Shown: positions 8,821 to 39,100 of the stretch, piece by piece
Numbering within the stretch: position 1 is the stretch's first letter
Layout: each line of letters begins with the position of its first letter
Assembly: GCF_002571385.2 (NCBI RefSeq)
Contig: NW_019217871.1
Location: 186,062-250,061, forward strand
Source of the DNA: Stylophora pistillata
Taxonomy: Eukaryota
Direction: 5' to 3'
Length of the DNA: 64,000 bases
The notes under the pieces: generated by a model
The model's input: the letters and a program-made list of their open reading frames with translations, nothing else
Told to the model about the DNA's origin: nothing
Database searches by the model: none
Translations under genes and position numbers: made by a program

Positions 8821-9159
8821 TTCTCCATTTAAGTCGCGTGTTTAATTAGAATTCGCGCGTAATCAAAGCCGATAGGCTCGCGGATTGCAATTTATTGCTT
8901 GAAGTGCTACAGGTGGCTGTGATCAAAATTGATTCTCACGAACCACTTGCCTATTCAGATTGTGCGCGTTGATACTTAATACTGCTTGAAATTCAAATCT
9001 ATACGTGGAATTTAATTCACAGGTTTGGTAATTACAAACTTTAGAGGATGAAAGCTTTGGATTTTAGCCAAGAATTGCCAAGAATTCAATTTTGTTTAAC
9101 AACCAGTGCAGTGCTGTTCAGATGTTGGGAATTTTACTTGATTGAAACAGCGCAGCGAC

Positions 9160-10662
9160 ATGACTCATATAACGATAAGGCTGGTGTCCCCGCCGTTTGG
9201 GAGTAGGAATATTCGAGAAATTATTAGAATCAAGACTCCGGAAAAGCTTCTACCGCTTGGGGATTCCAGTGGGAGTTTTTCTGTCGATACGGGAGGAAAG
9301 GTTGTTCATATGGCTGATTCAAATTACAAAGACAGCTGTAAGCAGGCAATGAACGGCAACTGTGAAGTTTTAAAACCTTATGATGGGTCTCCTTCAAATG
9401 TAGATGGAAACGAGAATGTTTGCGAGTACGTTCATGGTCATGTAAGATCAGAAGATTCAAAACAATTTAATTCTCTTCATGTAAACACAGAAAATTACAC
9501 AGAACTGAATGGAATGGCTGTGGAGAACAAAGAGAAGTGGACGAAATGTGCGGAAAATTTAGAGACGCATTGCGATACATGTGGATTGAGAGTTGAGCGT
9601 GAGGAGGTTGAATCAGAACTGTACATAACACGCAAAGATTTAGCGACTGTGCAAAGCCAGCTTGAAATGTTTAAACTCAGGCTTGAAGAGGAACTTGTTG
9701 AAAGATTTAAACTCGAGGAAGAGCTGAAATCTGAAGCTGAGTCCCACGAGAACGACTTGAAAATATTAAAGGAGAAAATTGATTTTCTGGAACAAAATGA
9801 AAGCGAAAAAACTTGGCGGATTGAAGAGTTAGAAAGCCAGATTGTGGTTTATAAAGAAGAGCACGAAAAAAGCTGGGAAGAGGTTGAAAGTTTGCGAAGT
9901 TTCGTTGGTAAATATCAGAATGATTTGAGTAAGGTAAGGGTTGAAGCGAACAGTGCAAGTGATCAAGCAGTTGAAGCCATCAACGAGATGGAATTGTTGA
10001 CAAAGAAAACGGAGAAAAACGAACAACAGAAAGATGAGATTAAAAAACAGATGAAATCGGAGATGGAAGGATACTGGAAAGAGGTGCGAGAATTGAGGAG
10101 TGTTTTTGAAAACTGGGAAAAGTTAGATTTCGAAAGGAAAACGCGCATTCAGACATTAGAAAACGAAGTTGCGTCTTATAAAAGCCTCGTGGATGAACTA
10201 AGAGAAAATCTGGCTGATGGAGACAACGGAGCAAGCGGGGAAAGGAGTAACGTGAAAACAGACTCTACCAAAAGTGAGCATTTGTTCAGAGTACTTTGTC
10301 AGGAATTGAACGAGGTCTTTAGGGAACATCTCAACAGCCAGGGAAAGTTTTCCGAGTTGTCGCTCGTTTTGGAAGCTACTCATAAGGAACTTGAAGAAGC
10401 GAGAAATCGAAGCCAGAGTCAAAACCAGACTCTGCAGCAGTTTAAAAGAAATTACAACGATTTACACGACGATATGACAGCGTTGAACGAAGAAAATCGT
10501 CATTTGAGGAAAAGTTTGGAGAAAAAGTGCGTGGAATTAGCAGATATTAGACGAAAGTTTCTCGCTTCAGAGACGCAAGTGTCTTGGCTCAAAGAAGCGT
10601 TAGATATTGTTGACAAAGCCAAGAAAAAATCAAGCTGTAAGCGAGTGCAATTAGCCAGTTAA
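9160..10662 (+). CDS. Uncharacterised coiled-coil protein with intronless CDS (~450-500 aa; start at ATG 9160 or 9310)
   Basis: 1.5-kb uninterrupted ORF, E/K/L-rich heptads over the C-terminal ~70%. Internal repeat EKTWRIEELESQIVVYK / ERKTRIQTLENEVASYK. AATAAA at ~10940. Confidence 0.75.
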   Translation: MTHITIRLVSPPFGSRNIREIIRIKTPEKLLPLGDSSGSFSVDTGGKVVHMADSNYKDSCKQAMNGNCEVLKPYDGSPSNVDGNENVCEYVHGHVRSEDSKQFNSLHVNTENYTELNGMAVENKEKWTKCAENLETHCDTCGLRVEREEVESELYITRKDLATVQSQLEMFKLRLEEELVERFKLEEELKSEAESHENDLKILKEKIDFLEQNESEKTWRIEELESQIVVYKEEHEKSWEEVESLRSFVGKYQNDLSKVRVEANSASDQAVEAINEMELLTKKTEKNEQQKDEIKKQMKSEMEGYWKEVRELRSVFENWEKLDFERKTRIQTLENEVASYKSLVDELRENLADGDNGASGERSNVKTDSTKSEHLFRVLCQELNEVFREHLNSQGKFSELSLVLEATHKELEEARNRSQSQNQTLQQFKRNYNDLHDDMTALNEENRHLRKSLEKKCVELADIRRKFLASETQVSWLKEALDIVDKAKKKSSCKRVQLAS

Positions 10663-15833: not shown

Positions 15834-18800
15834 ATGGAAAACAGAAGAGGTAAAGAGAACTTCTTGTTAGAAATTGAAAATCTGGAGCTTAAAGCAGCTA
15901 TAGAAGGAAAGGAGAGCATTATTCGCCAACTACAAGACGAAGTAAAAATTGTGCGGGAATCAAAAGAGACACGAATGGTGACCACTGAGCGAGTTTACCG
16001 TGAAAATGAGGTTCAAGAACTTCACAGCGCGGTACAGAGTAAGGAAATCGCTGTTAAACAACTTCGGGAAGAATTGACGGACGCTCATCATAACATCGAA
16101 CAGGTGTATCAACAATACGCACGCGCGAGAGGGGAACTAGAAGCGAAGGACGCCACGATCAGCAGGTTGCATCAAGAAAATGACAGATTGCAAGAAACAC
16201 TGGAGACAACCCAAAATGAACGTCTGCAAACGCTGGATAAACTCAGCGGAGTGCAAGCGGAACTCTCCGCGCTGCGAGTGGATAAAAATTGGTTAGAAAG
16301 TCAGTTAAAGTTTCAGCAACAAACTTCATCGTCGAAAACTTCACGAAGTTCTGTTGGCGGAACGACAACTTTCAAGGGTAGGGAAGAATTAGTCTTTACA
16401 ATGGAGAGTGTTTCGAAAGACCGACAGACTTTACAAGAGTTAATCAATACGGCTTCGCATTATGAGGAAATTATACGTAGCCTGGATAGTGGCAGACGAA
16501 CTGAGGGAGTTAGCCCACGTGAATCGTATCGATTTTCTTCCTCCGCTTCTTTAAGCCCACGACGAGGCGAAGGTTCGAACATTGACGAGAATTATGTGAT
16601 GGAGCTCGGCAGCAAAATGTCTGAAGTTGAAGAACGGTTACAAAAAGCTGTCGTATCGCAAAAGTACCAGCTGCAGGCTGACAGGGAACAATTAATTCAA
16701 GAATTTAAGAATATGCAAACCCAGCTTTTGCAACATCAAAGACACCATGAAATGCAAAAGAGTGAAATTTCATCGAAGGAGACGCTTGTACAGAGGCTTA
16801 AAGCTGCAAAAGCCACTTTAGAGACCGAGGTGGAAACACTCAAAAGCGATCTGGCAGCTTGCCGAGCAGAGAGCGACAAGTATTTACAAGAACAGAGAAA
16901 ATTTCGGCAAGATTTGACATCTTCGAGAAGTAAAATCTCCAAACTTGAAGCAGAGTTGGAGAACGAGAGACGGGAAAGAGAGATGGAAAAGCAAAGATCT
17001 CAAGAATTGAGCTCACACAGTCATACAGAGAGAGAAGAGTTATCCAAACTAAAAGTTCAGTTTCGAGAGCAGTACCTGCTGAACGAGAACCACATGAGAG
17101 AGATCGCTGCCAAAGATAATCTGGTCCGGCAGCTGCGAGAGAAACTGGAAGCTAGCGCGGTTGAGTTCGATAAGTTGAAGTCAACGCGCACTGCTACACA
17201 AGTTTCACAAACGGAAGTTGGACGAGACAGGGAAATTTTGCAAGAGAAACTTCTCGCCACGGAACGAAGGTTTGCCGAGTTGGAAATTTCCTACGAAGAT
17301 TGCCGACAAAAGAACGAGAGATTACATCGTGAAATGCAGGAATACAAACAGAAGCATTTCAGAGTCGATATTGTGGATGATTCACTTGAACAAAAGAAAT
17401 TGGACCTTGAAAATGAACTTGTAATTGCGCGCAAGAAGTTGTCGAAGCTCGAAAATGCATATGAAAGTTGTCAAAAGGAGAAGCTACAGCTTCAGCAAGA
17501 GTTAATACCGGCAAATACTAAAATGACACAGCTGAAAAACTCCTTTGAGAACTGTCAACAACAGAAGGCCCAATTACAACAGGAAGTCCTTTCCTCGCAT
17601 AAGCGGCTTGGCGAGTTTGAAGCTAAAACGGAGCGATATAAACAGGAGAAGGTGGAAATTCAGCGCGATGTGAAAGCTTTAGAAAACCGATTCAACAAAG
17701 TTGAGCAGCAACTTCAACGGACTCAGAGCGAAAAGCAAAGCCTGGTGGAGAAATTAGAAGAAGCCAATAGACGGCTGGTGAATGTTTCGGATGATGGTAA
17801 GAAAAGGGTTAACCAGTGGTACGACCAGCAGAAGAAGTTTGATGATCTTAGTACAGAAGTGCAGAAGAAAGACAAGACAATGCACCAGCTTAGAGACGAA
17901 AAGGAACTACTGGAAGCTGAAATTCAGAGATTCAAGCAAGATTTTGAGACGTTGAATAAGGAGCTCGCAGCCTGTCAGCGGGAAAAAGGGAACTTGCAGA
18001 ATGATTTGGCGATAGAAAGACAGCGAAACGCCGAGTTCGAGAAAGATTGCGAACGTCTTAAACAAGAACGAGAGAAGCTTCAACACGAGTTGAATTCTAT
18101 GAAAGAAAACAACGCACAGTGGAAAGATATGTGTGAAAAGATTCAAAACGACAAGGAAAGATTACAAGAGGAAGTGTTGGCGGCTCAAAGGAACATTTCG
18201 AGGTACGAGTCGAGCCGTGATAGCGAGAAACGAACCTCACAACAGGACACCATGGTATTGAAGACCAAGATAAGCGGACTTGAAAGTGAAATTCAGGAGC
18301 TGAGAAGGAATGAAGAAAGCTTTAAAACTAAGACAATGGAGCTTCAGAGGTGTAAAGTAGAATTTAGCAAATTAGAGAGAGAGCTTGAAGACGGCGCGAG
18401 GAAGTTCGAGCGCGTCACCAGAGAGAGTGAAACGAAGGAGAGTCTTGTGCAGCAGTTGAAAAGGGAGAACACTGCGCTTAAAAAAGAGCTGGACTCAGTG
18501 CTTGAAGAATCTGGTGATCATTCCACAAGTTATGTTCCCGACACAAAAAGTTTTGAAGTTGAGTTGGAATTACTTCAAAATCAACTCGCGGACACAAATG
18601 CGCATGCGAGAGAGCTCGAGGAGGACTGTGATTCGTGGAGACAAAAAAACCTGCAGCTCCAAAAAGAGATAGTTTCCCTCGATGCGAAGAACTCCGAGTT
18701 GGAAAGAGCATGCGGAAGATTACAAGAACAAGAAAGAAGACTACATCATGAGCTTGAAGGTTGTAGAGGTACTATTAACAAGCTTGAAAAAGAGATAGTG

Positions 18801-21800
18801 TTTCATCAGGAAAATAAGAGCAAAATAGAGAGCGCTTTTGAGAATTCAGAACTGAGAAAAGACGAGTTGTCAAGAGAAATAATCGAGGCACGAAAGAAGC
18901 TCTCGGAGCTTGAAAAGCTCTACGATGCTTCAAAGAATGAGGGTGAATCAACCAGAGAAAAGGATCGGGCAAAGATTGCAAAGCTTGAGACCCAAGTAGA
19001 AAATATGTCAAAGCAAAAACAGCAAATGCAGCAATTACTAGAGGAGACCAGAGATGCAGCTCGAAGATACCAAGATGAACTGCACAAGGCACAGACTAGA
19101 CTGCAAGAGTTGAAGAGGGACTCTGAAGTATACCACAAGGATATTCACTCTAAGGAAACACAAAACAAAAAGATTCGAGTGGAAAAAGAAACTATTGAGA
19201 GGGAACTTGAGAGCGTCCAGGTTCAACTGGTCAACACTACCTCTAGTGTGGAGGCGTTTGATATGGAGAGATACGAAATAATGCAAGAGATGCGCTTGGC
19301 CAAAGACAAGGTCCAGGAGTGGGAAAATGCATACAAGATGCTGCAACAAGAACACGAGAGTCTAGAGAAGGAACTAAGGAATGCTCAGAAGATGGTGAAT
19401 GAGGTGGAAAACGAGTTCAATAAAAGCCAAAAAGATCGACAAAATGAAATCCGTACCAATCATTTGAAGGTCAGCAAGTTTGAGTCACAAGTGCAGGTGG
19501 TTCTGAAACAACGAGACTCTCTGAAGGAACAGCTCGAGGAAGTTCGCGACGAGTTGAAGAAAACCAAAGACGATTACACACATCTGCAGAAAGAATTCAT
19601 CCAGCATCAGCAGAGATGTGATGCGTATCGAAAGGAGCTCTTAGCAAAGAGTCATCAGATTGATAAGGTAGAAGGCGAGAAAAACTATTTGATGAAGAAG
19701 ATGGAACAGATGAAACTTGAACTGGGACATAACGAAGTGACAGGCCAGGCTGTGAAGCAAAAGAGAAACATATTAGAAGACGATCTGCAGTCAGCTTGAG
19801 ATAGGATAACAGAGCTTGAAAATAATTTGGGCTCACTTCGATCAGAGAATGATGAGATTCAGAAAGACCTTTACCGTGTGACCAACAAGCTGACGACTGT
19901 AGAGGACTCTTACGCCAGGGCTCAAGAAAAAGTGAAGGATCTTGAGATACAGTTGGATGCTGCTCGTAAGGTCATTAGCGATCTAGAAGAAGAGCTATCT
20001 ATTATCAAGCACAAAGCTTCCCAGCTTGAAGCAGATCACGGGTACAAATTTGGCCAAATCGACGATCTGGAGGAAAAACTAGATGCAGCTCACAGGAGTT
20101 TGTCTGAGATCGAGTCAGCGTATGAATTCAGCGAGCGTGAGAAAGAAGATCTTAAACAACAACTTACACACGCAGAGAGGAAAGTATCAGAGATGAGGCA
20201 GACAATTCAGAGAAATGAAGAAGAAAATGATGATTTGGAAAGACAACTGGATAGCACTCGACATCGAACAACGAAGCTCGAAGGTCAACTAAATCAGGCC
20301 CAGAGGCAGAAGACGCAGTACAAAGAACAGTTAGAGGACGTTAGGGCAAAGCTGTTGAAATGCAAGGATGAACTAGGAACGATACAAAGTCACCTTTACG
20401 ACTGTCAACGAAGTTTAGATGCATTACGGAAAGATGCTTCCGGAAAGGACAACACCATAACAGAATTACGAGGAAAGTGCTTTTCGCTTGAGATGACGCT
20501 TGGACAGACGAGTGAGACGCTAGAAAAATATCAAACAGAGAACGATTTACTTCTACAAAACAAGCAAGATCTCCAAGTAGAACTTCTGCAAAACCAAGAA
20601 AAGTTCCAAGAACTTGAATGCATGTACAAGCTGTGTGAACACGAAAAGCAAAGACTAGAGGAAGAAATTCACTCGTTTTACAAAAGACTCGCTGAACTTC
20701 AAGGATCCTATCAAACGTGTGAACACGACAAAATGGACTCACAACGTCAAGTCATGGTTCTGGAGCAGAAAGTGAACAAGCTAGAGGCTGCTTTAGAACA
20801 GACTCAAAGGGAGAAAGCTTCCCTAGAATATCACTCCGGAGATTTAAATGTGTCAAACAAGAAGGCCGTCGAAGAATTGTCTGTTGTCAAAGTCCGATTG
20901 GAGGAAAATCAGAAATCAGTTAGCGAGTATTCAAACCAATTGTTCGAGAAGGAAAGAGTTGTCGAGGATTGCAAAGTGAAGATAACTACACTAATATCTG
21001 AAAATGAATACTTAAACTTGGAATTGACAAAGAAGAAGGAGCAAGTATGGCAGCTAGAAAATGATCGACGAAAGCTACAAGAGAAGTGGAGAGAAACCAG
21101 TGATGAAGTTATCAGGATGAAGCCATTGTGGGAGACTGCACAGCGTAAAAAAGATCAACTTGAATCAGAACTGCAAGCAAACCGAAAGAAGGTTGCAATG
21201 TTGGAATCTGACTTAAAGAAAAACGAGGAGAGGGGGAATCAGACTGAAAAAGAACTGACTATATGCAAGAGTAAATTATCAGACCTCGAAACAGAGTTAA
21301 ACTCTATGCGAAAAAAGGTTTCCGCGATGGAGTCGCATTACGAAGAGGCAAGAAAAGAACTGGAAGAGGTGCGAGAAGAGCTAAGAGCGGCGCAAGAGAA
21401 GAACACGAGTTATTCTATTCAGCTTGATACAGTTCAAGGCGAGGAGTTAGATCTCCGGCAACAAGTTGCGGCTCTGGAGAAGAATATAGAAGAACACGAC
21501 GAAGAAATCTCAAGTCTTCGTCAGAAGAAGGAGGCTTCAGAAGAGGAGGTTTTTGCACTACGGAACAGAGTGACACAACTGGAATCAACGATTCGTGCAC
21601 TGGAGTCACAGAAGCAGAACTTGAAAGAGCAACTCACCGATTCGAGGGACAAAACCGTGGAACTTAAAGAAGAAAATGTTAAGGTTGCAAGCCAGTTGAG
21701 AGAGCAACAAGGCTTGGCGCTGTCCTTGAAAAAGGCTCTTGCAAAGAAAGAGAAAACTATCGAGGAATTGAACGGAAGAATCTCTGGACTTGTAACAGAG

Positions 21801-24800
21801 CTGGAAACACTCCGTCAAGAAGGAATGACGATAAAAGTATCCTGCGAGACTCTTCAAGGGGCACAAGAGGACCTTAGTGTAAAACTGATGGAATACGAAA
21901 GCAAAGATGAAAAGACTCAGAGCGAAATGAAAGAGCTTCGTGATTTACGGGAAGAGCTAGAGCGGGAATTGAACGTTGCTGTACAAAAGAGCTTAGAACA
22001 GTAAAGCCAGTTGAAGAGTTTGCTGCGTGAGAATGAGAGAATGAAATCGAATCTTGACGAAACTGTCAGGAAGCTTGCCAAACAGTCTGAAGATGGTTCT
22101 AGAGCGCAGAAGGATGTACAAGAATGTCAGATAGTCATCGAACTATTAACAGCTGAAAACAAAGCCATGGACTCTCAAATCGAGGAGCTAAGAGCTGTGA
22201 AAGTGGCTTTGGAAAGCGAATTGGCAAACATTCGCTTGGAATGTGAAGAAGATAAATCAAAGAACGAAACCAACGAGAAGAACATCAGAGAGGCTGATGA
22301 TGAACTCAAGCAGTGCAAAAATGAAATTTCACGACTAGAGGACTGGATATCTGACTTAGAGAAGGAGAGGAATACCTTACAAAAAGACTTGCAGATCTCT
22401 AATTCTAGATGTCTGGACTTCGAAGGTTTGATTGTGAAGTCTTCTCAGGTCGAAAGCGACCTGAGACACGAATTACAAAGCTACAATAATAAGATAATTG
22501 CTTTGGAATCGGAATGCAAGATGTCAAAGAATCAAAGAAATGAAAATAATCGTGAGAACGAATTGCTGGGAAAAAAGTATCGAGATCTTGATGAAGTCTT
22601 CAAGAAAAGCGATCGAGAAAGAAAAGAAGTGAGACAAGAGTTGATTAAAACACAAAGCAAATTGCAAGACCTGGAATACAAGTACGAGTATGAGTGCAGT
22701 GAACGAGGCTCACTGGTAAAGCAGCTGGAAGATACAAATGGTCATCTATCTGCAGCTCTCGACAAAACTCTCAATCTGGAGCAGAAAGTCGCAGAACAGA
22801 CAATTCTTTTAGATGTGGCCAACAAGGAAGTCGATGAGAAGGACGAGGTTATTCGTCAGCTGAAGGGCAGCAAGACGTTTTTGGAAGGGCAGAGAGATAG
22901 CTTAAAGCAAACTGTGGCGTCTGGAAAGGAAGAATCTGAACGTCTACAACAAGAGATTACTCGTTTCCAACGCGAAAGCCTTCAGCTACATAAGAGGACC
23001 GCTGAACTGGAATCAAATCTTTCAAAAGTAGTCGCAGAAAAAGAACGAGCTCGAGACGAAGCAAATAGATTCAAAGACGATTTATTTTCTCTTAAGAGTC
23101 AACTGGATGAGTCACAAGGGGAGAAAGAAGATCTTGAGCACCAACTCGAGGAGTACAAACAAAGCGCTTTTAACTACAAGAATGACGTGTTGACATTACA
23201 GAGGCAAGTTACGGAGCTAACTGGTCAGCGTGACGTGCTTAAGGAGACATTGGACGCAAAGGAAGGATCCATGGGGCAGTTACGAGAGTCTAAGAGAATG
23301 TATGAAGAAGAAATTGAACGATCGCAGAATGTTCTAAGGGAAAAGGAAAAGGAGAACGATTTGTTGACGACGAAGAAGAAGGAGTTGGAATCTAGTCTGA
23401 GCTCTGTGGTGCAACAGTTAGCAGAAGCAGAAAGCACAATGAAGGTAAACCAAGAAACTATCCAAAGATTAGAAGAAAAAGTGGATTCTCTGAGAGGTAA
23501 ACTGGAAGATGGGGAAAGAAAGATGACAGAACTGAAAGAGAAGGAAAATGAAGTTCAGCGAAATAATATTGTTTTGAAGTCACAGATATCAAGTTTAGAA
23601 TCTAGTTACCAGGCCTGTCAAGAGGATCGTAGCGACCTGGAGGGAGAAATCCAGTCTCTTCGGGATGAACTGGAGACAACACGAAAATCACATGACGAAG
23701 ATCATGAAGAACTCGACAAATTACGATCCGAAGCTCAGACGAGTAGAAATAAAGTGTTTACTTTGGAAACACAAATACAACGAATTGAAAGAATCAATGA
23801 CAGTCTGGAACAGCAGGTTGATACGTTCGCACCAGTGGGTAGTGACACTAACAGTGAGCTGATACGTCTCCAAAGAAGAGTCCAAGAACAAAACATTCTT
23901 CTCGAGTCTCGCAAAAGAGACTGTGCAAGCAAGGAGAAAACTATCGAAATGTTCAAGGCGGAAAACACGACCCTGAAAGTGGATGTCAAGAGTCTACAAG
24001 AGGAAAATACCGGTATCAGGACAAGTATGGAAATGCTTCAACATAGAAAGGATGCTGCGGATAAGGAACTATTCGATGCTTTGAAGAAAGGTTCAGAGTA
24101 CGAGCTTCGCCTTGACACAGCACAGGAAGAGAATGATGAGTTGAACAGAGAGCTGGTGGAAAGGCAAGAGAAAGTCTCCAGTGTGCAGGAAGAATTGTAC
24201 CGAGCTCTTAAAGATCTGGCGAACGTAAGACATGAACTGGAAGATGCGCAAACTCGAGCCACGAAAAGTAAGGATGTAGTCGGTGATTTGCAGCAGCGCC
24301 TTGAAGAGAAAGAAGCAGGTTTTGAGACGTACAAAAGCACTTCCGAGGAGAAGGATAACAAGATTGATTCGTTAAAATTGGAGGTCAACACACTAGAACA
24401 AGAGCTAAAATCCTTGACAGAGGAATTGTCTAACGAGAAAGGAAAACACCAGCATACTCAAGAGAAAATAGCTAAATTGCAGACCGAGTTAGAAGCTCAA
24501 GAAGCAACTGCGGCCAACTTGGAGGACACTGCTGCGCGTCTTCGAAAGGAAAAAGATGACTTGAGGAAGGAGACTTTATCGAATCAAGCTCTTGTTGCTG
24601 ATCTTACGGAGCGACACCAAGCCTTACAGAGAGAACATGAGGGCCAAGAACACGATATTATGTCACTGCAGCAAAAGCTGACTTATATAGAAGTAAGATA
24701 CAAGAGCATATCTGAAGATAAAGACAAACTCAAGGAAGAGTACTATGCGCTCAAACGAGATACATCTGAGATGAAAATTGCACTGGATGGTGCTCAGCGA

Positions 24801-27800
24801 GAAAAAGGCAAACTTGAAGGCGAATTGACAGTTGTTAAGCAACAGAGCATAGACCTGCAGAGTAGAGTAACTGTAATTCTTCAAGAAAAAGACAAATCAT
24901 CCGAAGAAGTCTCATCAATGAACACTTCTCTGACGACATTACAAGCCGACTACAACACGATTTTATCTCAAAAAGAAGAAAAAGACAAGGAAATAATTGA
25001 GCTCCGTGAGAAATTATCTAAGAATGTGCTTGAGCACGGTGACTGGGAAAAAACAAAGGCTGCTTTACAAGGAGAAGTCCACTCACTACAGAGAAAGGTA
25101 GACGAACTGGAACACACCGTAGCATATTTAGAACAAAAGGACAAACAGCTTCAAGAAGAGTTCATTGATTCTCACAAAAAGATAACAGCATTCGATCAAG
25201 AACTGATTGTGGCTAAGAACAAAATTAAAAGAATGGAGGCCTTTGAGGGTGTGGAGAAGGAGAAGATGAAAGTCCTCAGCGATGATCTTTTCAATGCGGA
25301 GCAGAAAGTTGCACAACTTGAAACTGCTTTGACATCAAGTCGAGAGAAAGAGTCACAGCAACAGAACGACCTCATGACTGCTTACAAGAAAGTAACTGAC
25401 TTTGAGGTCGCTTACCAGACAAGTCAGTCAGCGAAGAACCAACTCCAGCAGGATATCACCATGTACAAGAATAAATTAACAACAAGTGATCGTAAATTAC
25501 AGAGCGAGATCAAGAACAGAACACAACTTGAAAGCCAACTTCAAGAAGCAAAACTCAGGATTGAAAATCTTAAGACGGAGGCGAACAGACATCAAAGAAA
25601 ACTAACCCAACAGCAACAGGAATATGAAATCACACAGAACGATACTGAAAGTAAAACCAAGATTATTGAAAATCTTCAATCGTCCAAGAAGAGCCTCGAA
25701 AATGAAATCCACGATCTTCGACGAGATCTTACAAGTTTAAAACTGACCTCGGAAAAACTCAGCCACGAAAACAAAGAGTTACAGAATCAATTGGAAGTCA
25801 GTCAAGAGCGCCTGGTAGATGTGGAGTCTGCCGCTGAGTCGAGCACCATCGAGAACGACAGACTCAAAACGGAGATACTGTACTTGGAAACGTCTTATCA
25901 GGAAACCCAGCTGATATGCCAGATGCTACAGAAAGAAAAAGAAGGTCTAAATTCTCAACTCCTCGAGGCTGCTGCCCCAGATTTGGTGGATTTTGGATCT
26001 ACAGACGACTCTTTGAAGAAAGAGAAGGAGGATCTAGAAAGCCAGCTCTCTAAAGTTAAAAAAGAATTGCACTCATTGAAAACTGCTCATGACGACATAC
26101 TGACAACGAAAACTAAGGCGGTGGAACAACTGAATGAAGTGAGGAAAGAACTTACTGATTTACAATCGAGTTATCAAACGGTTCGGTTGGATAATAACAG
26201 AAACGTTCTAGAGCTTGAAAATGCCAAAAAGCGACTAAGCGATTTGGAGGCGTCTTATTAAGAAGTAAAACGAGCTAAGGAGACATTGCAAGAGAACTCT
26301 ACTGACACAGAGAGGAAGCTAGTCTCGCTGGAGGCAAGTTATGAATTGTGTGAGAGCCAGAAAAACGACGCTACCAGAGAATTGTCAAACATGGAAAAGA
26401 AGCTTGCCCTGTTGGAATGCTCGTATAACAGGATTCGCGAAAGGGAGACAGAGCTAGAGCAAGAAATTCTTGACTCGCACAAGAGGGTTACAGAATTAGA
26501 TTATGAACTGCAAACGAAGAAGGAGCTTCTGGGAGAGGCGCAAAACGTTGTGCGAGACATAGAAGAAAGGAATGATGTCCTGCAAGTAGAAGTCCTTGAC
26601 TCTCAAGGGAAGATCAATGAGTTGGAAGCGACTTGTGAAATGTGGAAAGAAAAGGCAAATAGCTGGGAAGAAGAGGCCAAAAAGGCAGAACGTAGAAGTA
26701 AGAATGCAGAAGAAGTTTACAAATTCGGGCAACTTGAGAAGACGGAACAAGAGAAGGAGCTCACCACTTTGAAAGACACCATCTCAACTTTGGAGCGAGA
26801 AGTTAAGGAAAGCAACAGAGAGAAAGAGGAATTACTATCACAACTGGATGATTTAAGGAACACTAGTTTCAATGAGCGAGACGACGTGAACAACCTAAAG
26901 ACAGAAATAAATGAGTTACAAAGGAAAATCTCGGACAGTAGCCGAGAGTTTGACGAACAATCGATTGCTTTAGCGGAATCTAAGAGGCAACAAGTACTCC
27001 TTGAAGACGAACTTGACAGGCTTAAGAGAGATTTATTGAACAAAGAAAGATCTAACGAGGATTATGCAAGAGAAAACAACAGGATGGAACATGAGCTGGA
27101 GGTGCTCAAGGATGAACTAGGAGAAAAGGACAGGCGATTGAAATCTTGTGAAGAAGAAAAGGAAAACGTCCGTAATGAGATGATTACAGCGCACAATTTG
27201 GTATGTACACTGCAAGATGACGATCGAGCGAGTGAAGTGCAAACGCTCGTGCTACAGCAAGAACTGGAGTTTTTGAGGAAGAAAGTTGCCGATGCGGAGC
27301 GGGAAGTACAAACTTTCAAGACAAAGAATGACGCATTGAGGCAAGATATTGTCGATGGGAGCTTTTCGAGCAGCACAGATCGAGAAGCCAGTCAACAAGA
27401 AATCCAAAGACTGAGGAATGAGCTCCAAATCAACACTGATAAATACCGTGAGCTCGAAAGGTTTTGCAAAGAAAGCGAAGACGAGAAACTCAGCCTTCAA
27501 AGAGAGCTGTTGGATACCCACAAGAAAGCATCAGAAATGGTGATGGCACATCAATATTGCCACCAAGAGAAAGAAGCATTCCAGGATGAAATAGCCAATC
27601 TAAAGAGAAGACTACAGGAACAAGGAGATGCAACAGATGGTACCAAAGACAGATCAATAATTCTTCAAGATGAACTTTTGGATTTACACCGAAAACTCTC
27701 TACCGCGGAAAGTATGTACGACCGTTCTCAGAACGACAACAAAAGACTTCGGTCAGATTTGGAAGATGCAGAGAACAAAATTAGTACTCTTGAAAATGAG

Positions 27801-30044
27801 CTCTTTCTAGTCTCGCGTCATGAGATTACACAACTTAGTGATGCCACTGTCGGCATTGAGGAGAAAACGTTTCTTGAAGAAAAGCTGCTTTCTGTCGAGA
27901 CGAAGTATACTGAGTTAGAAGTAACATACCAGCGTATTATGAAAGAGAAAAAAGAAATCTTTGATGAACAACAAGAGAAAAGTGAGGAGTTATTTCGAGT
28001 TCAGAGATTACTGGATGAAAAGACGAGAGAATTGGATTACTTGCAAGGGCAGCTGAATGATCGCAGCAATAGTACAATGTTAGAAACGAATCGTTTGCGA
28101 GATGAACTAGAGGAAGCTCTTGAGAGGCTACATAAGAGTGAATCTGAATTATCGGCTAAAACTTTCGAGTATGACCGTGCAGTTGATGAACATCAACGAA
28201 TAGTGTTTGAGAAAGAAAGCCTCATCAGCGATGTTAATGCTCAAATAAGTTCTCTTGATTTTGAAGTGTCCACCTTGAAGAGAGAGCTGGTGTACACCCG
28301 GGACGACAAGGACAGCTGGGACGAGGAAAGGAAGAATTACAGAGAAGAAGCCGTCAAATTGAGGAAAGAAAAATCACGCGCCGAAGAAGAACTTCGTCTA
28401 ATTAAAGATGATTATGAGAATATCAAGGAAATGATCTCCGTCATGAAGGCAGAAAAGGGCCATTGCGAAGAGGAGAATGGTAGACTCAAAGAGGAATTAC
28501 GAGTGGCAAATCTTGAGATTGATCGCCTGAAACGAGAGATGTCAATGAGTAAATACGAGTATGATTCCTTCGAAAGTGAAAAGAGTAGCTTTAAGGAAGA
28601 AATTACCACCCTCAAAGTTAGCAAATCTGAAATTCAAGAGGAACTTTGGCGAGTAAAACGCGAACTTGAGAAATTAGAACGGGAGGCTGGCATGAGAGTA
28701 CGAGATCTGGAGGCATGGAAAAGAGAGAAATCGACCCTACAAGACGAAATCAAGACTTTGCAAAGTGAAAAGATTAGTCTTACTGAGGAAAATAGAGAAC
28801 TGACACGAGAAATAGAAAGACTGATGGGTGAAATAGCGTCAAAATCTGAGGTAACAGAGGATGTAGGAAAAGTGAGGCGGGAAAGAGAGGAGCTGTATTA
28901 CGAATACACATTGATCAAAGAGAAATACACGAAGATTGAAGAGGAACGCAGGATCTTTCTGATCGAGAAACAAACCTTGGTCCAGGAGAAACAGAGTCTG
29001 GAATTTGATCTCAATGACTGTAGAAACAAGTTGCAAAGGTTTGAAAAATCTAACAGTAACTTAAAAGAGGAGAAACTTCGTTTGGAATACGAATTGAAAA
29101 CGGCTAAGGAGCGGCTTTTGATCGTCGAACGTGAGTTCGATTCCAGGGCAATGGAAAAACAGAAAATCTCTGAGGAAGTCAGCAGCACTCGTTTTGAAAT
29201 CAGAAAAATGGAAATTGACTTGCAAAAGGCTCTAAGAAAACTGGACGATGCAAATAACGATGTCAACGCCAAACAAGGTCGACTTGAGAGGCTGGAAGGA
29301 GAACTTGAAGATCAGCGACGAGAGTCCAAGTTACATGAGCTGGACCGAGAGCGCAAGGCCAATCAGGTTAAAAACTTGCAAGACCGGATTGACGAGCTCG
29401 AGCGCGAGATTCAGACCCTGCAAGATGACTTGATTCTAAGCCACCGAGCATACGAGCAGTGTAAGAGACAACTAGAAGACTTTGAATTGTCCGCTGACCC
29501 AACAGAAACATCCACACTTCGTGTCGATGTCATAGAAAGACCTCAGCAAACAACCACTCTGGATATCAATGTGAAACCACAAGTTACGACACTAGACATC
29601 AATGTGGAACCACAGAGGACATTTGAATACAGCTTTACACCACAAACAGATGAGTGGTACGTAACTCCGCAAACAATAATTGACCACAACTCTGCGCCAC
29701 AGACCTCAAGGACTCAATTTTACACCAGACCACATAGAACTTCGGAATACAGTTTTACCCCACAGACTACTACAAAAGAACTCGAAATAACAACACAAAC
29801 AACTACACTCGACATCGATGTCCAAGAGCGTCACGAAACGACTGAACTAGAAATTGATATTGAACAAGAAACGAAAAACGCATCAAGGGCATCATGGTCC
29901 ACAGGACGTGCGTCATCTTTTCAGGTGTTCAGGGACCAGAAGTATGGACCCGTGGAGTTCGCTCTCGATGAAGAGGAGGACGGGGAATATGAGATTGCAC
30001 AGATCGAAAGCAGGAGGGACCCAAGAAGAAGATGGAAGTATTAA
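15834..30044 (+). CDS. Giant intronless coiled-coil protein (golgin-160/GOLGA3-related modules), 4736 codons interrupted by three in-frame stops; pseudogenised allele, assembly error or recoded gene
   Basis: Track ORFs at 15834, 19827, 22011 and 26286 share one frame. The only interruptions are TGA 19797-19799, TAA 22002-22004 and TAA 26259-26261. Coiled-coil text continues through each: LQSA*DRITELEN, SLEQ*SQLKSLL, EASY*EVKRAKE. Confidence 0.8.
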
Positions 30045-32592: not shown

Positions 32593-33194
32593 AGGAAATG
32601 ACACGAACACCTGTCGTAAACTTAAAAACCAACGAATCACAAAGAGGAAGAAAGAAACGGGAAATAACAACAAATGGCTTTTTTGCATAACAGATATCAG
32701 CCGCTTTAATCCTGATTAAATGGCCTCTTACAGTATTTCACAACCAGAGAACAAGTGACATTGTGTATTCACCGAGAGAGAGATTCGAAGATTACTCAGT
32801 TCTGTTGGAAAACATTGACTGAAGCCTATCGTCGGTTAAATATCGATGGGAATCTAACTCTGCGGCGAATAACTGTCAGTATATTTCTTCGGGTAATAAT
32901 TGCAGTATCAGACTTTGCGCTGTGCATTCTACCACGCATAAAAATAAGTTACGTTCGTCAGAGAATGGAGAATGTACCTGGAGAATGTAGCAAAATGAAC
33001 TTCTTACGATAACGTGACAGACGAACCTTCATTTGAAAAGGCAGAAAGTCAGTGAAAAAAAGCACCTTCATTTTTTGAGGAATCCTCCAGTAACGTGGCT
33101 GGTTTATTTTTGCGTCACTAAAAGTCGTCGCGGCATGCTTGCCGCGACTTAAAAGCGGCATTTGACGCTGGAATATTTTCGACAAATTGACTAC

Positions 33195-36100
33195 ATGGCG
33201 AATTACGCACAAGAAAAAGAAAAAATCCACGAACAGCTCGAACTAGCCAAGGAAACACTGAACAAATTGAGGGCGCTTACTGATCCGAAAAGCGACTCGG
33301 AGAGTTTTCATAGTGTACCGAACGGTGGTGAATCATCCGCAATGAACGAACAAAATGGATGGGATGTTTGCCGAGAGCTCACCCAAGACAGCGACGAAGG
33401 AGCAAGCTCTGGAGTAGGAATGGAATCGCCAAATTTGGATCTAAGCCCACATGAAAGTACAACTTTTGTAGACGATGATAAATCACGAGTGGCGCCTGAT
33501 AGTCTGGTGAGAGTACTGGGTCTACAGGTATCGAAATTGGAGGACGATTTAAAAATATCTCTGTTGTCCTATTTTGAGCAAATGGAAGCCCAGAAAGAGG
33601 ATTTAATCTCTAGCTTTGAAATAATGCACGCGCAGCTTTTAAGGCATAATGAATCTTGTCAGCAACACCGTGACGAAGAAGCGGAGAAGGACAATTTGAT
33701 CGAGCGGCTGAAAGCTGCTAAACAAGCACTTGAACCGGATGTGGAGAAATTAAAGCGAGAAAATATGCTGCTGAAAACAACGGGAAATTCGCGCCCACGT
33801 GAAAATGGGATCCGTGGTTATCGAATAAAACCTGGTTATGTTGAACATGACGACCTCAGCGAAACGCTCATGAAAGAAAATTCCCGTTTGAGGGAAATCC
33901 TTCGTAAATACGAATCAAACGATTATGCTAGACTCGAAAGAAAAGTCGCTCTTCAGGAAAAGCTTTGCGAGTCTTATAACAAAGACATGAGCTCTAAAGA
34001 TAAAAAGCTTAAGCGCTTGGAAGCTGAAAACAAAGGTCTGCAAGAGGATGTAAAGAGCTTGCAAGAGGAAGTTTTGAGGGTGAATGCAACACGATTGAAT
34101 TCAGAGCACGATAAAACAAGATTACAGCAAGAATTACAGTTTAGCGAGGAGCAAATAAACACTTTGAGAGAAAAACTGAGTAGCTCTGAGCAAGAGAGTA
34201 GATATTTACAGCATTGTATAAGCGACGCAAATTCTCAAGCAAATGTTTCTGGCGATAACTTGTCTGAATTGGAGAAAGACATTTTGGTACTACGCGAGAA
34301 GTGCGAAAGTTATAGAGATAAGTTGAACGACAAAGAACGATTCCTTGAATCTGTGTGCAAAGAAAAACAAGGGCTTATCAAAGCGATGGAAGAGTTGAAA
34401 AGAGAACTGGCCGCTGTTCGAGGCGAGGAGCGATCACTGAAGATAGAAAACGAGAGATTACAGAAGGAAAACGCCGATAGTGAAATTGATCGTTTGAGTT
34501 CTGAAACTACGACTGAGGCCCAAGGAAGTACAATTTCTAAAATGAAGCAACATCTACACGAATTGCGGAGTAAGGTTGATGAATTGGAACAGCAAAAGAG
34601 ACAACACAATGACAGAGAAGCAGAGTTAAGTCAGGGTGTTCTCGCGAACTTAGAAAAATACACCCAAGTTGAGCAACAGTTGTATCTTGCTAAGAAAGAA
34701 CTCGCACAAATGCGCGGATTTTACGAGTCCAGCGAGGAAAAGAAGATAGATTTACAAGCAGAGGCTCAGACTTGTAAAGAAAGAATTTCAATTTTAGAAA
34801 GAAAGCTACAATCTAAGAAAATGGGCGAAGAAGACGAGCAACGAGTTAGCGATGTTGAAAAGAACGTGCAAGAACTGAACTCGGAAAATCAACGATTGAA
34901 AGAAGATTACGAAACAAGTAAGACGGAAATTGAGGAGTTGGAAGAAGCATTGCAAAGCGCACGCGAGCAGAATTCTTTGCAAAGAATGAGATTAGACGCT
35001 CATGAAACTCTCATGAAAAGGAAAGATGAAAGAATCAAAGAACTACAGAATGACCTTTTAGAGCTTCACAACCAAATGGATACCTTAACTGATGAAATCC
35101 TCAAGAAGAACCGTGAGCAGGAAGGTTTACGAATGGCGAAGATGTTGCTGGACCAAGAATTAGACCTACTGAGATCTGGAAAATTACCGGTGCGATCACT
35201 TCAGAAAGAAAGTGCTGCTAAAGATTCCTGGTCATTTCACCACACAGCGGGTCCGGCAAGTCCAGATAGCGGGTTTTCAGACATGGAGAGAGACAAAGCC
35301 ATTGACAAAATGAGAAGAGAAATTCTCATCCAAAACAAATTTCACCCTCAACAGCCCCCTTTGTTCGAGGAAAATGTGGCAACAAACGAGGACAGTAAAA
35401 CAAAAGCGGCTCTTGCACTAGAAACTCGCAGGCTAAAAGAAACCGAGAAGCGATTGGCGGACGTCATTGCTGAGAACGAAGAGCTTAAAGATCGTGATGA
35501 AGAAGCAAGGAGCATGCAACTTCAAATCGACTCGGAGCTTCGTAAGATGATGGAAGAAAACAACGACTTGAAAGAAAAGGAGAAGTTACTCACGCAAGCA
35601 TTGAAAGAAAACCACAGCATTAAATCACAGATGGAAAATTGCGTGGAACAAATTAATCCACAAATGGAGAACGATATTTTTCTTTTTGTCGACGAGCCGA
35701 TAGAAACAGCCATTTTGCAACCTGTTGTAGAAGCAAGTCTAGAGAACAGCATGGAATGTTCGGAATATGTACCTGATGGAACACTTGTGGATTTTTCCGA
35801 TGAACAAGATGGTCCTTCTATGAAACCTGTTATCGAAGGCGCTGATGTAATTCAAACCAAAGAAAGAGAGCTGGAACGTAAAGTTCGTGATTATGAAACA
35901 AGTCTGGCCAAGATGGCTAAAGAGAACGTCCGACTGTTGTCAGAATTATCAAAAACTCAAGATGACCTAAAAACTATGGAAGAAAATTGTAACTCAGCTC
36001 AGGAAAACAAAAACAATCTTCAAAAAATAATGCAAGAAGAACTCTTTGCAAAAGATGAAGAAGTTGCCAGGTTACAGAAAGAGCTGTCCACGTTATGCGA

Positions 36101-39100
36101 GGAACGAGAGGGTCTAAAATCCTCTGTAAATAGCTCCAAGGAAACAGGTCTTCACGTAGAAGAAGAGTTGTTAAGAGCTCAGACTATTATTCTGGATTTT
36201 GAAAGACAACAAGGGCTTTCACGTGAGAGAGAACAATCTCTGCAAGAACTACTTCATAAATCAGAAGAGAGCAATGCGAGTTTGCAGGTACAACTGAGTG
36301 ACGCGCAGAAACAGTGCCGACATTCCCAACAAGATGCCCAAAAGTTGCAGCAACAGATTCTTCATTTGCAACAAGGTTCTGTAGAATTGGAACAAGAGGT
36401 TAGTGATTTGCGAAAAATGCTCTCTGAGGTAACAGAGAAGAAGAGGGCTGTATCTGAACAGCTCGAGAAATGCTCCGATGCTCAGGAGAAGCTGCAAAGA
36501 GCACAAGAAATTATACTGGAACTGGAGAGACAACAGGAAATTTCACGCGACACAGAAGTATCTCTTAAAGCACATCTAAACCAGTCGGAAGAGAGCTATG
36601 CCAATTTGCAAGTTCAGGTGGGCGAGAAAGGAAGGGAGTACCAGAATATGGAACAAGAAACGGTAGTGTTACAACAAGAAATTGCCCTTCTTCAGGAAGG
36701 TTCTGCAGAACTGGAACGGGAAGTGAGTGAATTGCGAGAAAAGGTAGCAGAAGGAGAAGAGAATAAACAAAAAGCTTCTGAGAGTTCGAGAGATTTGCAA
36801 AAACAAAATGAAAACTTGCGAGAACAACTGCTTAAGGCGAACAACAGTTTAGAAACTTCAGAACAGGAAAATAGAGATGCGCTTTTAGAGCTGAAAGCAG
36901 ATATCAGAGAGAAGGAAAATCAGATTGAGCAACTTCAAGACGAGTTAAATCTCTTTGAACAACAATATAATGAAATTAGGTCGTTATCGAGCAACAATCA
37001 AACCGAGATTTCTGATCTTCGTGCGGGACTTATTGAAACCAAAGAGCAATTTTACACGGTTTCACAAGAAAAAGGAAGACTTCTCCATAGTGTGAAAGAT
37101 TTGGAGCACACCATTGCAGAACAAGACCAAATGATCCAAGCTTTGGAGTTGGAGAGGAAAGAAAATAAAAAGATCATGTATGAGAAAGAGAACAAAGTGG
37201 AAGATCTTGTTGATAAGCTTGAAGATTGTGAAAGTGAGAATAGTAAGTTAGAGGCAGAAAACCAACGTTTGAGAGAAAAGGTAGAAGAAGCCGCAGAAAC
37301 CCAACGGGAATTAGAACGATTACTGGCGGAGTGTAAAGAAGAAACGCGAGAATTTGAGCAGCAACTATCAGCAGCTCATGAAAGCATAACAGATTTGGAA
37401 ACAGCTTTCGAGAGAGGTGAAGACAAAAATGCACAAATCGGAGAAAACTTACGCGAGGCCAAAGAAAGAGTTGCAAAACTTGAAAATCAGCTGGATGAGT
37501 CGCTAAAAGAGCGTAGAGCGTTCGAACGAGATTACAGTGACGCAGAGAAGGACCTCGAAAAAGCACACGCGTCTTTGGATTCAAACAAGGAAAAGATTGC
37601 AGGTTTGGAGAAAAAATTGAGAACAGCAGAAGAGAGTATTGCAGAGCTTGAACTGGCCAGGGATAATGGATTATCAAACGAACAGTACCTACAGCAAAAG
37701 TTTGCAAATGCAAAGGAGAAAATTGACAAAACCGAAGCAGAGAACAATGACTTAAAGGAGAGACTCACAAAAATGGAGAAAAAATTCAACGATTCACTTT
37801 CCAAACAACAAGGACTTGCAGACAAGAAAGAAGAACTGGAGAAGATAAATAGTGAAATTTGTCATGAGCTTGAGTACGAAAGAGAACGACGTTTAGCTTT
37901 GAAACAAAAACTCGAAACCCGAGATAGAGACAATGAAGTTATTCAAAGAAAAGTGATTTTGTTGGAGAAGAGTAAAGCCGAGAATGAGGATATTCAGCTA
38001 AGAGACATGGAAGAAAAAACCAAGTTGCGCGAAGAATTAGCACGGACTAAAAAGCTCTTATCCGAGTTAGAAGCAACTGGAGAACATCAAGAGGAAAACA
38101 TCAACGAAATGGAAGATTCGTTAAGAGAAATGCGAGGGAAAATCGCTTCTCTTGAGCAGAAGCTGGAAGATGCTACACGAGATAATGCAGACTTACATGG
38201 TGAACTTGAAGAACTCAACCGTAAATTGAAATACGCGAAGGAAGAGAACGTAGAGTTGGAGAAACGGTTGCAGAAACAGAAAGAAATCAGTGATGAATTT
38301 AGGAATAATTTAGCAGAACGTGAGGAGAGCGCTCTGAACTCAAACTACAACCGCGACGCAGCCGAACGTGCCCTGCAGTCTGTGAAGAAGGATCTCGCGC
38401 GCAAAGACACCAAGTTGAAAATGCAGAAAGAACACATTGATGACTTGGAGAATGAGTCTGACAAAATCGGTAAGAAACTCAGGGAAACTGAGTCGTCCTA
38501 CAAGAAAGTAACTAACGAGAATGAAAGGCTTGCAAAAGAATTGGCCGACATTAAAGGCAAGCTAGCAAAGCTGGAGGCAATGTATAAAGAGAAAGCAAAC
38601 CTTCCGACGGATTCCGAAGTTGCAGTCGTAAGAGTCTCGGAATTGCAGTCAGATCCCGAGAGAGCTGATAAATTAATTCGAGACTGGTCTGACAAATTAA
38701 GCACCGCTCAAATCAAAGTAACCGACTTGGAAAACGAACTTCTAAGAGATATAAAGAAACACGAAATAAGGGTCCAGAGGACAACACCAGGAGCCAGGGA
38801 TTGGAGGAGAAGAAGCGTTGATAATTTGTCGGAGTACAGAAGGCCGAGCAGAGCACGACAGCGACCGAACAGGAGCCGAGACAGCTCCGTCGAATCACTT
38901 CGATCAACTCAGTCCATGTTCGACTTTTTCGACGAAAGTAGTGTACTAAATGACGACAGAGCACCCAGTAATTTATCAAGGGAGTCAGATAATGAAAGTA
39001 CGATTGGTATCCCTGTTGTGAATGTAATTCCCTACGACACTGTTACAGCTGAGAAGGTAAACATAAACTCTTCCAAACAAGGAAGTGCAGAGAAAGTGGA

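What the first reader, a model, noticed from the sequence alone, without database searches (positions are those of the whole stretch)
15834..30044. One 4736-codon reading frame punctuated by three in-frame stop codons and no frameshifts
Seen: four same-frame segments of 1321, 734, 1418 and 1260 aa separated only by single stops (TGA 19797, TAA 22002, TAA 26259). Coiled-coil sequence continues straight through, no ATG follows immediately, and no plausible intron removes the stops. Each stop is one substitution from a fitting codon (CGA; GAA/CAA/AAA). Option a: a very recently inactivated allele or duplicate, favoured because E/Q/K codons mutate easily to stops and none has the UGA-CUAG readthrough context. 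Option b: consensus errors. Option c: programmed readthrough or editing giving a nested ladder of 1321/2056/3475/4736-aa rods sharing one N-terminus, a tunable molecular ruler. Option c would be a new system.
Basis: partly seen in the sequence, partly recalled or inferred. Interest (0 to 1): 0.8.

Follow-up and report, generated by a model that had tools for sequence, protein, structure and literature searches.

The report
Giant coral coiled-coil gene, three nonsense mutations
An intron-less 4,736-codon coiled-coil gene of a coral-like animal carries three in-frame stops that are private single G-to-T changes, where every relative examined has a normal codon, so it is most likely a recently broken gene or null allele and not a recoding system.

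Summary
Window 15834-30044 (+) is one frame of 4,736 codons with stops only at 19797 (TGA), 22002 (TAA) and 26259 (TAA). It ends at TAA 30042.

The gene is the syntenic orthologue of a giant coiled-coil gene of anthozoans (stony-coral-type contigs). Relatives at 52-90% protein identity align without gaps across each stop site that they cover, and each has a sense codon there:
- Site 1: GGA, GGG, GGT, GCT or ACT.
- Site 2: GAA in all five loci that reach it.
- Site 3: GAA in three loci, AAA in one.

Each stop is therefore a derived first-position substitution, G>T where the ancestral codon is clear. The terminal TAA and the C-terminus (...RRRWKY*) are conserved, so TAA terminates in this lineage.

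The stop contexts (UGA-G, UAA-A, UAA-G) are not leaky ones. No downstream RNA structure or Rfam element was found.

The window lineage shows no faster protein change downstream of the stops, and three stops correspond to only about 0.4% neutral divergence. The lesions are therefore very young. They are either real (a young pseudogene or null allele, favoured) or base errors; reads are needed to tell which.

Side finding: relatives have four introns here, and the window has none.

The parts
15834..30044 (+). Whole reading frame of the giant coiled-coil gene (4,736 codons plus terminal stop). It is intron-less in this genome.
   Evidence: It is colinear from end to end with the exons of relatives L001/L007, L003, L004 and L005.
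15834..19796 (+). Segment 1 (1321 aa), including the conserved start region and an N-terminal motif (aa 226-337) shared with the downstream paralogue.
   Evidence: 62-73% protein identity to P0001-P0005. Against L006: 90.6% nt identity, dN 0.044, dS 0.379, omega 0.117. Motif.
19797..19799 (+). Premature stop 1, TGA. Relatives have GGA (L006), GGG (L004), GGT (L005), GCT (L001/L002) and ACT (L003).
19800..22001 (+). Segment 2 (734 aa).
   Evidence: 65-76% identity to relatives, with no gaps. More distant homologues P0009, P0011, P0020 and P0108 match segments 2 and 3 in colinear order on either side of site 2.
22002..22004 (+). Premature stop 2, TAA. All five related loci that reach this site have GAA (Glu).
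22005..26258 (+). Segment 3 (1418 aa).
26259..26261 (+). Premature stop 3, TAA. Relatives have GAA (L001, L002, L004) or AAA (L003).
26262..30041 (+). Segment 4 (1260 aa): coiled coil followed by a T/Q/P-rich non-coiled tail ending ...RRRWKY.
   Evidence: The tail (aa 1035-1260) is 55% identical to the last exon of L007.
30042..30044 (+). Genuine terminator, TAA, at the same position as the TAA of the relative L007.
19779..19780 (+). Position of intron 1 of the relatives (phase 1, about 620 nt in L001). The window and L006 have no intron here.
23444..23445 (+). Position of intron 2 of the relatives (phase 0, about 480 nt). Absent in the window.
29038..29039 (+). Position of intron 3 of the relative L007 (phase 2, about 200 nt). 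Absent in the window.
29366..29367 (+). Position of intron 4 of the relative L007 (phase 0, about 130 nt). Absent in the window.
33162..40649 (+). Intact 2,495-codon open frame of a neighbouring coiled-coil gene on the same strand. It is a distant tandem paralogue, sharing only the N-terminal motif, and ends in TAG.
9142..10662 (+). Upstream 506-codon coiled-coil open frame, which serves as a synteny marker. The same ORF lies upstream of the orthologue in L001.
   Evidence: 62% identity to L001:1729-3195.

Best explanation
This is the orthologous, intron-less copy of a giant (about 4,700 aa) anthozoan coiled-coil protein gene. It has very recently acquired three independent nonsense substitutions: GGA>TGA, GAA>TAA, and GAA (or AAA)>TAA. 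It is a young unitary pseudogene or a null or truncating allele carried by the sequenced individual. Ordinary translation would stop at codon 1322 and give at most a 1,321-aa N-terminal rod. Segments 2-4 still look perfectly coding only because too little time has passed for further decay. Shown: the lesions are derived and private to the window, and the gene was long constrained before them. Inferred: that the lesions are real in the DNA, sit on one haplotype and are not rescued.
For: (1) Every related locus that covers a stop site has a sense codon there, in ungapped alignment. That makes 6, 5 and 4 loci for sites 1, 2 and 3. L001 and L002 carry the same protein.
(2) The closest relative, L006, has GGA at site 1 (90.6% nt identity).
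(3) The gene is at the ancestral locus. The upstream ORF is syntenic with L001, and the upstream non-coding flanks align with L006.
(4) Constraint was long-standing. Omega is 0.117 between the window and L006 over segment 1, and 0.03-0.15 among relatives in all blocks where dS is not saturated.
(5) The window shows no acceleration downstream of the stops. The ratio of window-unique to L001-unique amino-acid changes is 2.1, 1.9, 2.6, 1.7 and 1.8 in blocks A-E. The stops are therefore young relative to the branch.
(6) In this E/K/Q-rich frame 4.7-6.0% of random substitutions create a stop. Three stops then need only about 50-64 neutral substitutions, or about 0.4% divergence.
(7) Three nonsense lesions and no frameshift is not unusual. 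The probability is 0.05-0.42 for frameshift-indel:substitution ratios of 0.08-0.02, and 0.02-0.04 at a ratio of 0.12 (the ratios are assumed).
(8) The terminal TAA and the C-terminus are conserved, so TAA is a true terminator here.
Against: No reads, second haplotype or conspecific sequence could be reached, so the stops are not verified as real DNA variants. The window's own ORF is not on record in the collections. All three changes are G>T at codon position 1. The probability is about 0.01 for that type and about 0.07 for any single type (a post-hoc test). This hints at a common cause, which could be an artefact or one mutational process. No excess of private amino-acid changes is detectable in segment 1 against L006 (36 vs 36 polarised nonsynonymous changes). 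That is expected for very recent inactivation, but equally for no inactivation at all.
Confidence: 0.62

Rival explanations
1. The three stops are not in the germline genome. They are base-call or consensus errors, or low-frequency or somatic variants fixed by the assembler, and the gene is intact and makes the 4,736-aa protein.
For: The rest of the frame is flawless, with no indel in 14.2 kb, and shows no sign of relaxed constraint. All three changes are the same type, G>T. From general knowledge, G>T is the oxidative-damage type of artefact.
Against: Random substitution errors dense enough to give 3 stops imply about 50-60 errors in the ORF. However, window-private changes in segment 1 are no more numerous than those of L006, and the G>T share of window-lineage changes (4.7%) is like that of relatives (2.6-3.9%). 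The neighbouring 2,495-codon frame of similar composition has no stop. From general knowledge, long-read consensus errors are mostly indels, and none is seen here.
Confidence: 0.27
2. Lineage-specific recoding. The stops would be read through, or edited at the RNA level (A-to-I turning UGA or UAA into UGG), so that full-length or nested products of 1321, 2056, 3475 and 4736 aa are made.
For: Downstream segments remain open and look constrained. The stops fall on exposed heptad positions e, e and b. From general knowledge, an intron-less mRNA would escape NMD that depends on exon-junction complexes.
Against: The stops are not conserved in any relative, including the closest. Known readthrough stops and their UGA-CUAG context are conserved across orthologues (PMC4132726). 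The contexts here are UGA-GAU, UAA-AGC and UAA-GAA. The 120 nt after each stop fold no better than shuffles (z -0.23, +1.01, +0.24). No Rfam family, SECIS included, matches in 64 kb. The same gene uses TAA as its conserved terminator. Three successive readthroughs at ordinary efficiency would yield a negligible amount of full-length product (inference).
Confidence: 0.04
3. The stops are removed by splicing of short in-frame introns, or they are sense codons in a variant nuclear genetic code.
For: GT...AG pairs in a multiple of three can be drawn around stops 1 and 2: 15 nt at stop 1, and 18 or 39 nt at stop 2 (read directly from the sequence).
Against: The residues such mini-introns would remove are aligned, conserved coding positions in all relatives. 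The real introns of this gene in relatives are about 130-620 nt with GTA/GTT donors and T-rich acceptors. On the variant code: the neighbouring 2,495-codon frame and all the relatives' exons lack in-frame stops, and TAA, TAG and TAA terminate the three large ORFs in the window.
Confidence: 0.01

Closest known systems
Young unitary pseudogene or segregating nonsense (loss-of-function) allele
   Same: The lesions are private, derived single-base nonsense changes in a gene that is intact and constrained in related species. It sits at the ancestral locus, and the rest of the frame has not yet decayed.
   Different: There are three nonsense lesions and no frameshift across 14.2 kb, and all three are G>T. 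Whether they are fixed, heterozygous or real at all is unknown.
Programmed stop-codon readthrough genes of animals (e.g. OPRL1, OPRK1, AQP4 and MAPK10 with UGA-CUAG, PMC4132726; abundant readthrough in insects, PMC5100048)
   Same: An open, coding-looking frame continues in phase after a stop codon.
   Different: In those genes the stop and its 3' context are conserved among orthologues, and one stop is usually passed into a C-terminal extension. Here the stops are absent from all relatives, the contexts are strong terminators, and there are three internal stops in a 4.7-k codon rod.
Stop-codon reassignment (ciliate, Condylostoma and Blastocrithidia nuclear codes)
   Same: In-frame TAA and TGA lie inside a conserved coding frame.
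   Different: Reassigned codons occur throughout the genes of such organisms. Here there are only 3 in 4,736 codons and none in the neighbouring 2,495-codon gene. The relatives are anthozoans, and TAA is the conserved terminator of this very gene.
Processed (retrotransposed) pseudogene
   Same: All four introns seen in relatives are precisely absent, and stops are present.
   Different: The copy lies at the syntenic locus, and no poly(A) remnant follows it. The sister lineage L006 shares the intron-less state at the one intron site it covers, with omega 0.12. The intron-less gene was therefore a working gene for a long time, not a dead retrocopy.
Giant animal coiled-coil rod proteins (golgin-, CENP-F- and rootletin-like proteins)
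   Same: Thousands of residues of heptad-repeat rod. There are weak matches to generic coiled-coil Pfam families such as CENP-F_leu_zip, ATG16, Tropomyosin and Crescentin rod.
   Different: No match identifies a family. Three generic coiled-coil models pass their cut-offs in segments 2 and 3, and all other matches fall below theirs. Named homologues are only 'hypothetical protein' from Desmophyllum pertusum and Actinostola. The function is unknown.

Membership tests
Programmed stop-codon readthrough | [quoted passage not shown] | tested here: not met
   Every related locus that covers a site has a sense codon there. The similar ORF lengths of relatives (1318-1347 aa) come from an intron six codons upstream of site 1, not from a conserved stop.
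Programmed stop-codon readthrough | Leaky stop context (UGA-CUAG, UAG-CARYYA, UGA-C) | tested here: not met
   The contexts are TGA-GATAGG, TAA-AGCCAG and TAA-GAAGTA. The motif definition is from PMC4132726.
Programmed stop-codon readthrough | Stimulatory RNA structure or a known element 3' of the stop | tested here: not met
   Fold z-scores of the 120 nt after each stop are -0.23, +1.01 and +0.24. Rfam gave no match at gathering thresholds in the window.
Programmed stop-codon readthrough | Translation demonstrated beyond the stop | not testable with these tools
   This needs ribosome profiling, mass spectrometry or a reporter assay.
Variant nuclear genetic code | The codon recurs in-frame in many genes and is not used as a terminator | tested here: not met
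   The neighbouring 2,495-codon frame has no in-frame stop. The conserved C-terminus of this gene ends in TAA in both the window and L007.
Selenoprotein (UGA = Sec) | A SECIS element, and Cys or Sec at the aligned position in homologues | tested here: not met
   No Rfam SECIS match. Homologues have Gly, Ala or Thr at site 1.
Unitary pseudogene / nonsense null allele | Orthologues are intact and constrained, and the lesion is derived in one lineage | tested here: met
Unitary pseudogene / nonsense null allele | Relaxed constraint after the lesion | tested here: inconclusive
   No acceleration is seen downstream of the stops and there is no excess of private changes. But only about 0.4% extra divergence is expected, which is below what these comparisons can detect (dS to the nearest relative is 0.38).
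Unitary pseudogene / nonsense null allele | The lesion is present in the organism's DNA (reads, haplotypes, population) | not testable with these tools
   No reads are available, and the window's ORF is not on record in the collections.
Processed retropseudogene | Absence of the parental introns | tested here: met
   Four introns of relatives are absent in the window.
Processed retropseudogene | Insertion at a new locus with a poly(A) tail | tested here: not met
   The upstream ORF and flanks are syntenic. No A-run of 8 or more lies in the 3.1 kb after the stop.

The most novel reading that the evidence does not exclude
The three young stops are real and fixed, yet the gene still gives longer products. 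That would happen either through low-level readthrough or through A-to-I editing of UGA or UAA to UGG in an intron-less mRNA that escapes exon-junction-dependent NMD. The result would be a newly arisen ladder of 1321-, 2056-, 3475- and 4736-aa rods. A milder version is that a 1,321-aa truncated rod is a new functional isoform.
Probability: 0.04. Interest if true: 0.7.

Novelty: new member of a known kind. Interest (0 to 1): 0.15.

Why it matters
The main value is for annotation. The locus should be flagged as a probable pseudogene or null allele, or as a place to check base calls, in an uncharacterised giant anthozoan coiled-coil gene. It should not be treated as a recoding candidate.

There is also a methodological lesson. 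Prokaryote-style ORF calls on relatives gave products of nearly the same length (1318-1347 aa) as segment 1. This looked like a conserved stop, but it is caused by reading into an intron six codons upstream of the stop site.

The presence of four introns in one coral clade, against none in another at a syntenic 14-kb gene, is a tidy case for studies of intron loss or gain.

Tried and rejected
**Searches that gave little**
- The word search with segment 3 returned only two distant hits and missed the known orthologues, because coiled-coil words saturated the candidate list.
- The word search on the C-terminal tail (region 1040-1260 of segment 4) found nothing. In relatives the tail is a separate short exon outside the length filter.
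- The big representative search with segment 2 gave no full-length conspecific protein. It did yield P0029, which led to the closest relative, L006.
- An exact look-up of the window's 1,321-aa ORF found nothing on record.
- The rest of the gene in the L006 species could not be reached.

**Ideas rejected**
- Conserved stop 1: rejected, because the matching ORF lengths are an intron read-in artefact.
- Excess of G>T changes in the window as a sign of damage or error: not seen.
- L006 being a pseudogene too: its five 1-nt indels all lie in the last 800 nt of the contig, after 3.6 kb of clean frame. They are more likely contig-end errors.
- Pfam gave only generic coiled-coil matches.

- The window's frame was never submitted read through its stops. 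The four pieces were searched apart, and X was used at the stops in the one script that needed continuity.
- The relatives' spliced models were compared exon by exon (blocks A-E).
- The N run at 61254-61815 was left alone.
- The contig is not human. Its relatives are anthozoan.
Full report
**1.

Window 15834-30044 (+) is a single frame of 4,736 sense-or-stop codons (14,211 nt, a multiple of three).
- It is interrupted only by TGA at 19797, TAA at 22002 and TAA at 26259, and it ends at TAA 30042.
- The pieces are 1321, 734, 1418 and 1260 aa.
- The other five frames of the same stretch carry 152-385 stops.
- All pieces are E/K/Q/L-rich coiled coil. Pfam gives only generic coiled-coil matches such as CENP-F_leu_zip, ATG16, Tropomyosin and Crescentin rod. 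Three of these models pass their cut-offs in segments 2 and 3, and no match identifies a family.
- With each stop counted as one residue (X), the best heptad register is unchanged across each stop. The stops sit on positions e, e and b.

**2. What the gene is**

A word search with segment 1 found five products of 1318-1347 aa at 62-73% identity and full coverage, plus a sixth, shorter hit. At first sight this looked like a conserved stop. Fetching their contigs showed otherwise.

In those relatives (L001/L002/L007, L003, L004, L005) a GT...AG intron begins six codons before the position of stop 1. The prokaryote-style ORF caller simply ran into it. Beyond the intron the same frame content continues.

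Relatives are colinear with the window from the start codon to the last residue. Blocks A-E show 52-76% protein identity. The C-terminus (...IAQIESRR..RRRWKY*) and the terminal TAA are conserved.

The relatives come from long-read metagenome assemblies and from a TARA_..._METAG scaffold. My reading is that this is a Tara Pacific coral sample, which is an inference from the record name. More distant homologues carry NCBI names from the stony coral Desmophyllum pertusum and the sea anemone Actinostola, always 'hypothetical protein'. The window is therefore anthozoan, not human, and the protein is an uncharacterised giant rod.

Four more distant homologues (P0009, P0011, P0020, P0108) match segments 2 and 3 in colinear order on either side of site 2, with only a few residues unaligned at the junction.

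**3. The locus is the ancestral one**

The 506-codon ORF upstream (window 9142-10662) is also upstream of the orthologue in L001. The non-coding flanks align with the closest relative, L006. No poly(A) remnant follows the gene.

**4. The three sites in relatives**

Alignments are ungapped around each site.

| Site | Window | Relatives |
|---|---|---|
| 1 (19797) | TGA | GGA (L006), GGG (L004), GGT (L005), GCT (L001/L002), ACT (L003) |
| 2 (22002) | TAA | GAA in all five loci that reach it |
| 3 (26259) | TAA | GAA (L001, L002, L004), AAA (L003) |

Each stop is thus a derived, private, single-base change at the first codon position. It is G>T in every case where the ancestral state is clear.

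**5. Other recoding signals are absent**

- The contexts are UGA-GAU, UAA-AGC and UAA-GAA. The efficient animal readthrough motif is UGA-CUAG, conserved with its stop across orthologues (PMC4132726).
- The 120 nt after each stop fold no better than shuffles (z -0.23, +1.01, +0.24).
- Rfam finds nothing in the window, SECIS included.
- The neighbouring 2,495-codon coiled-coil frame has no internal stop. The three large ORFs in the window end in TAA, TAA and TAG. A variant code is therefore not in play.
- Mini-introns that could be drawn around stops 1 and 2 would delete residues that are conserved coding positions in every relative.

**6. How old are the lesions?**

Against L006 (90.6% nt identity over the shared coding part), segment 1 gives dN 0.044, dS 0.379 and omega 0.117. 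The intron-less gene was therefore a working gene long after the two lineages split.

Using three-taxon counts, the ratio of window-unique to L001-unique amino-acid changes is as follows:

| Block | Region | Ratio |
|---|---|---|
| A | before stop 1 | 2.1 |
| B | segment 2 | 1.9 |
| C | segment 3, first part | 2.6 |
| D | segment 3, second part | 1.7 |
| E | segment 4 | 1.8 |

There is no acceleration behind the stops.

In this frame 4.7-6.0% of random substitutions create a stop, and 22% of G>T changes do. Three stops therefore correspond to only about 50-64 neutral substitutions, or about 0.4% divergence. That is far below what comparisons with relatives at dS 0.38 or more can detect.

Three nonsense lesions with no frameshift has probability 0.05-0.42 for assumed frameshift-indel:substitution ratios of 0.08-0.02, and 0.02-0.04 at a ratio of 0.12. 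This is not anomalous.

**7. Real mutation or error?**

This cannot be settled without reads.

Against error:
- There is no indel in 14.2 kb.
- Polarised window-private nonsynonymous changes in segment 1 equal those of L006 (36 vs 36).
- The G>T share of window-lineage changes (4.7%) resembles that of relatives (2.6-3.9%).

For a common cause:
- All three lesions are G>T. The probability is about 0.01 for this type and about 0.07 for any one type. This is a post-hoc test.

I weight the explanations as follows:
- A real young pseudogene or null allele: 0.62.
- Artefact, or a variant not in the germline: 0.27.
- Recoding: about 0.04.
- Splicing or a variant code: about 0.01.

**8. Mechanistic reading**

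Standard translation ends at codon 1322. The gene has no introns, so a transcript would not be marked by exon-junction complexes downstream of the stops. From general knowledge, it might therefore escape that route of NMD. If so, a 1,321-aa N-terminal rod could still be made. This is an inference and was not tested.

The neighbouring paralogue shares only a ~110-aa N-terminal motif (34% identity). Redundancy with it is speculative.

**9. Limits and rules**

- All three word searches and the single large search were used.
- The window's frame was searched as four separate pieces, never through a stop.
- The N run at 61254-61815 was not touched.
- No step needed referral.

**Verdict**

This is a recently nonsense-mutated, or possibly mis-called, copy of a giant anthozoan coiled-coil gene, not a recoding system.

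Noticed in passing
window 19779/80, 23444/45, 29038/39, 29366/67; L001, L003, L004, L005, L007: Relatives L001/L007 carry four GT-AG introns of about 130-620 nt at these positions. L003 and L004 show the first two introns. L005 shows intron 1, and its scaffold ends just past the intron 2 donor. The window has none, and its closest relative L006 also lacks intron 1. The junctions in the window keep the ...AG|GT... signature. Without an outgroup it is not clear whether one clade lost all four (for example through cDNA-mediated conversion) or the other gained them.
   Followed up: partly
window 33162-40649 (+) and 9142-10662 (+): The broken gene is flanked on the same strand by two more large coiled-coil open frames, of 2,495 and 506 codons, both intact. 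The downstream one shares a ~110-aa N-terminal motif with segment 1 (34% identity) and looks like an old tandem paralogue.
   Followed up: partly
L006:9738-10465 (last 800 nt of contig ctg66450 of ERZ25067899): The closest relative's copy has five single-base indels, only two of them in A-runs. All are crowded at the contig end, after 3.6 kb of clean frame. They are probably contig-end consensus errors, but a second broken copy in the sister species is not excluded.
   Followed up: partly
window 19797, 22002, 26259: All three nonsense changes are G>T at codon position 1. C>T at CAA, CAG or CGA would be the commonest route to a stop (expected share 0.38, against 0.21 for G>T). The test is post hoc: p is about 0.01 for this type and about 0.07 for any one type.
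   Followed up: yes
P0001-P0005 vs L001:13957-13990: Prokaryote-style ORF calls on eukaryotic contigs gave products of nearly the same length as segment 1, because they read a few codons into an intron. This is a trap when ORF length is used as evidence for a conserved stop.
   Followed up: yes
window 45668-46066 (+), 52929-53750 (+): These are ordinary nuclear genes: a ribosomal protein L19e exon (Pfam 1.7e-38) and a RING-IBR (RBR-type E3 ligase) open frame (IBR 1.9e-23).
   Followed up: no
window 61254-61815; 61828-62627; 7472-7645: There is an N run of 562 bases, which was left alone. Short tandem arrays follow it (periods 20-60, and 8/16/24 GGAACGAT-type), and a 22/66-nt array lies at 7472-7645.
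   Followed up: no
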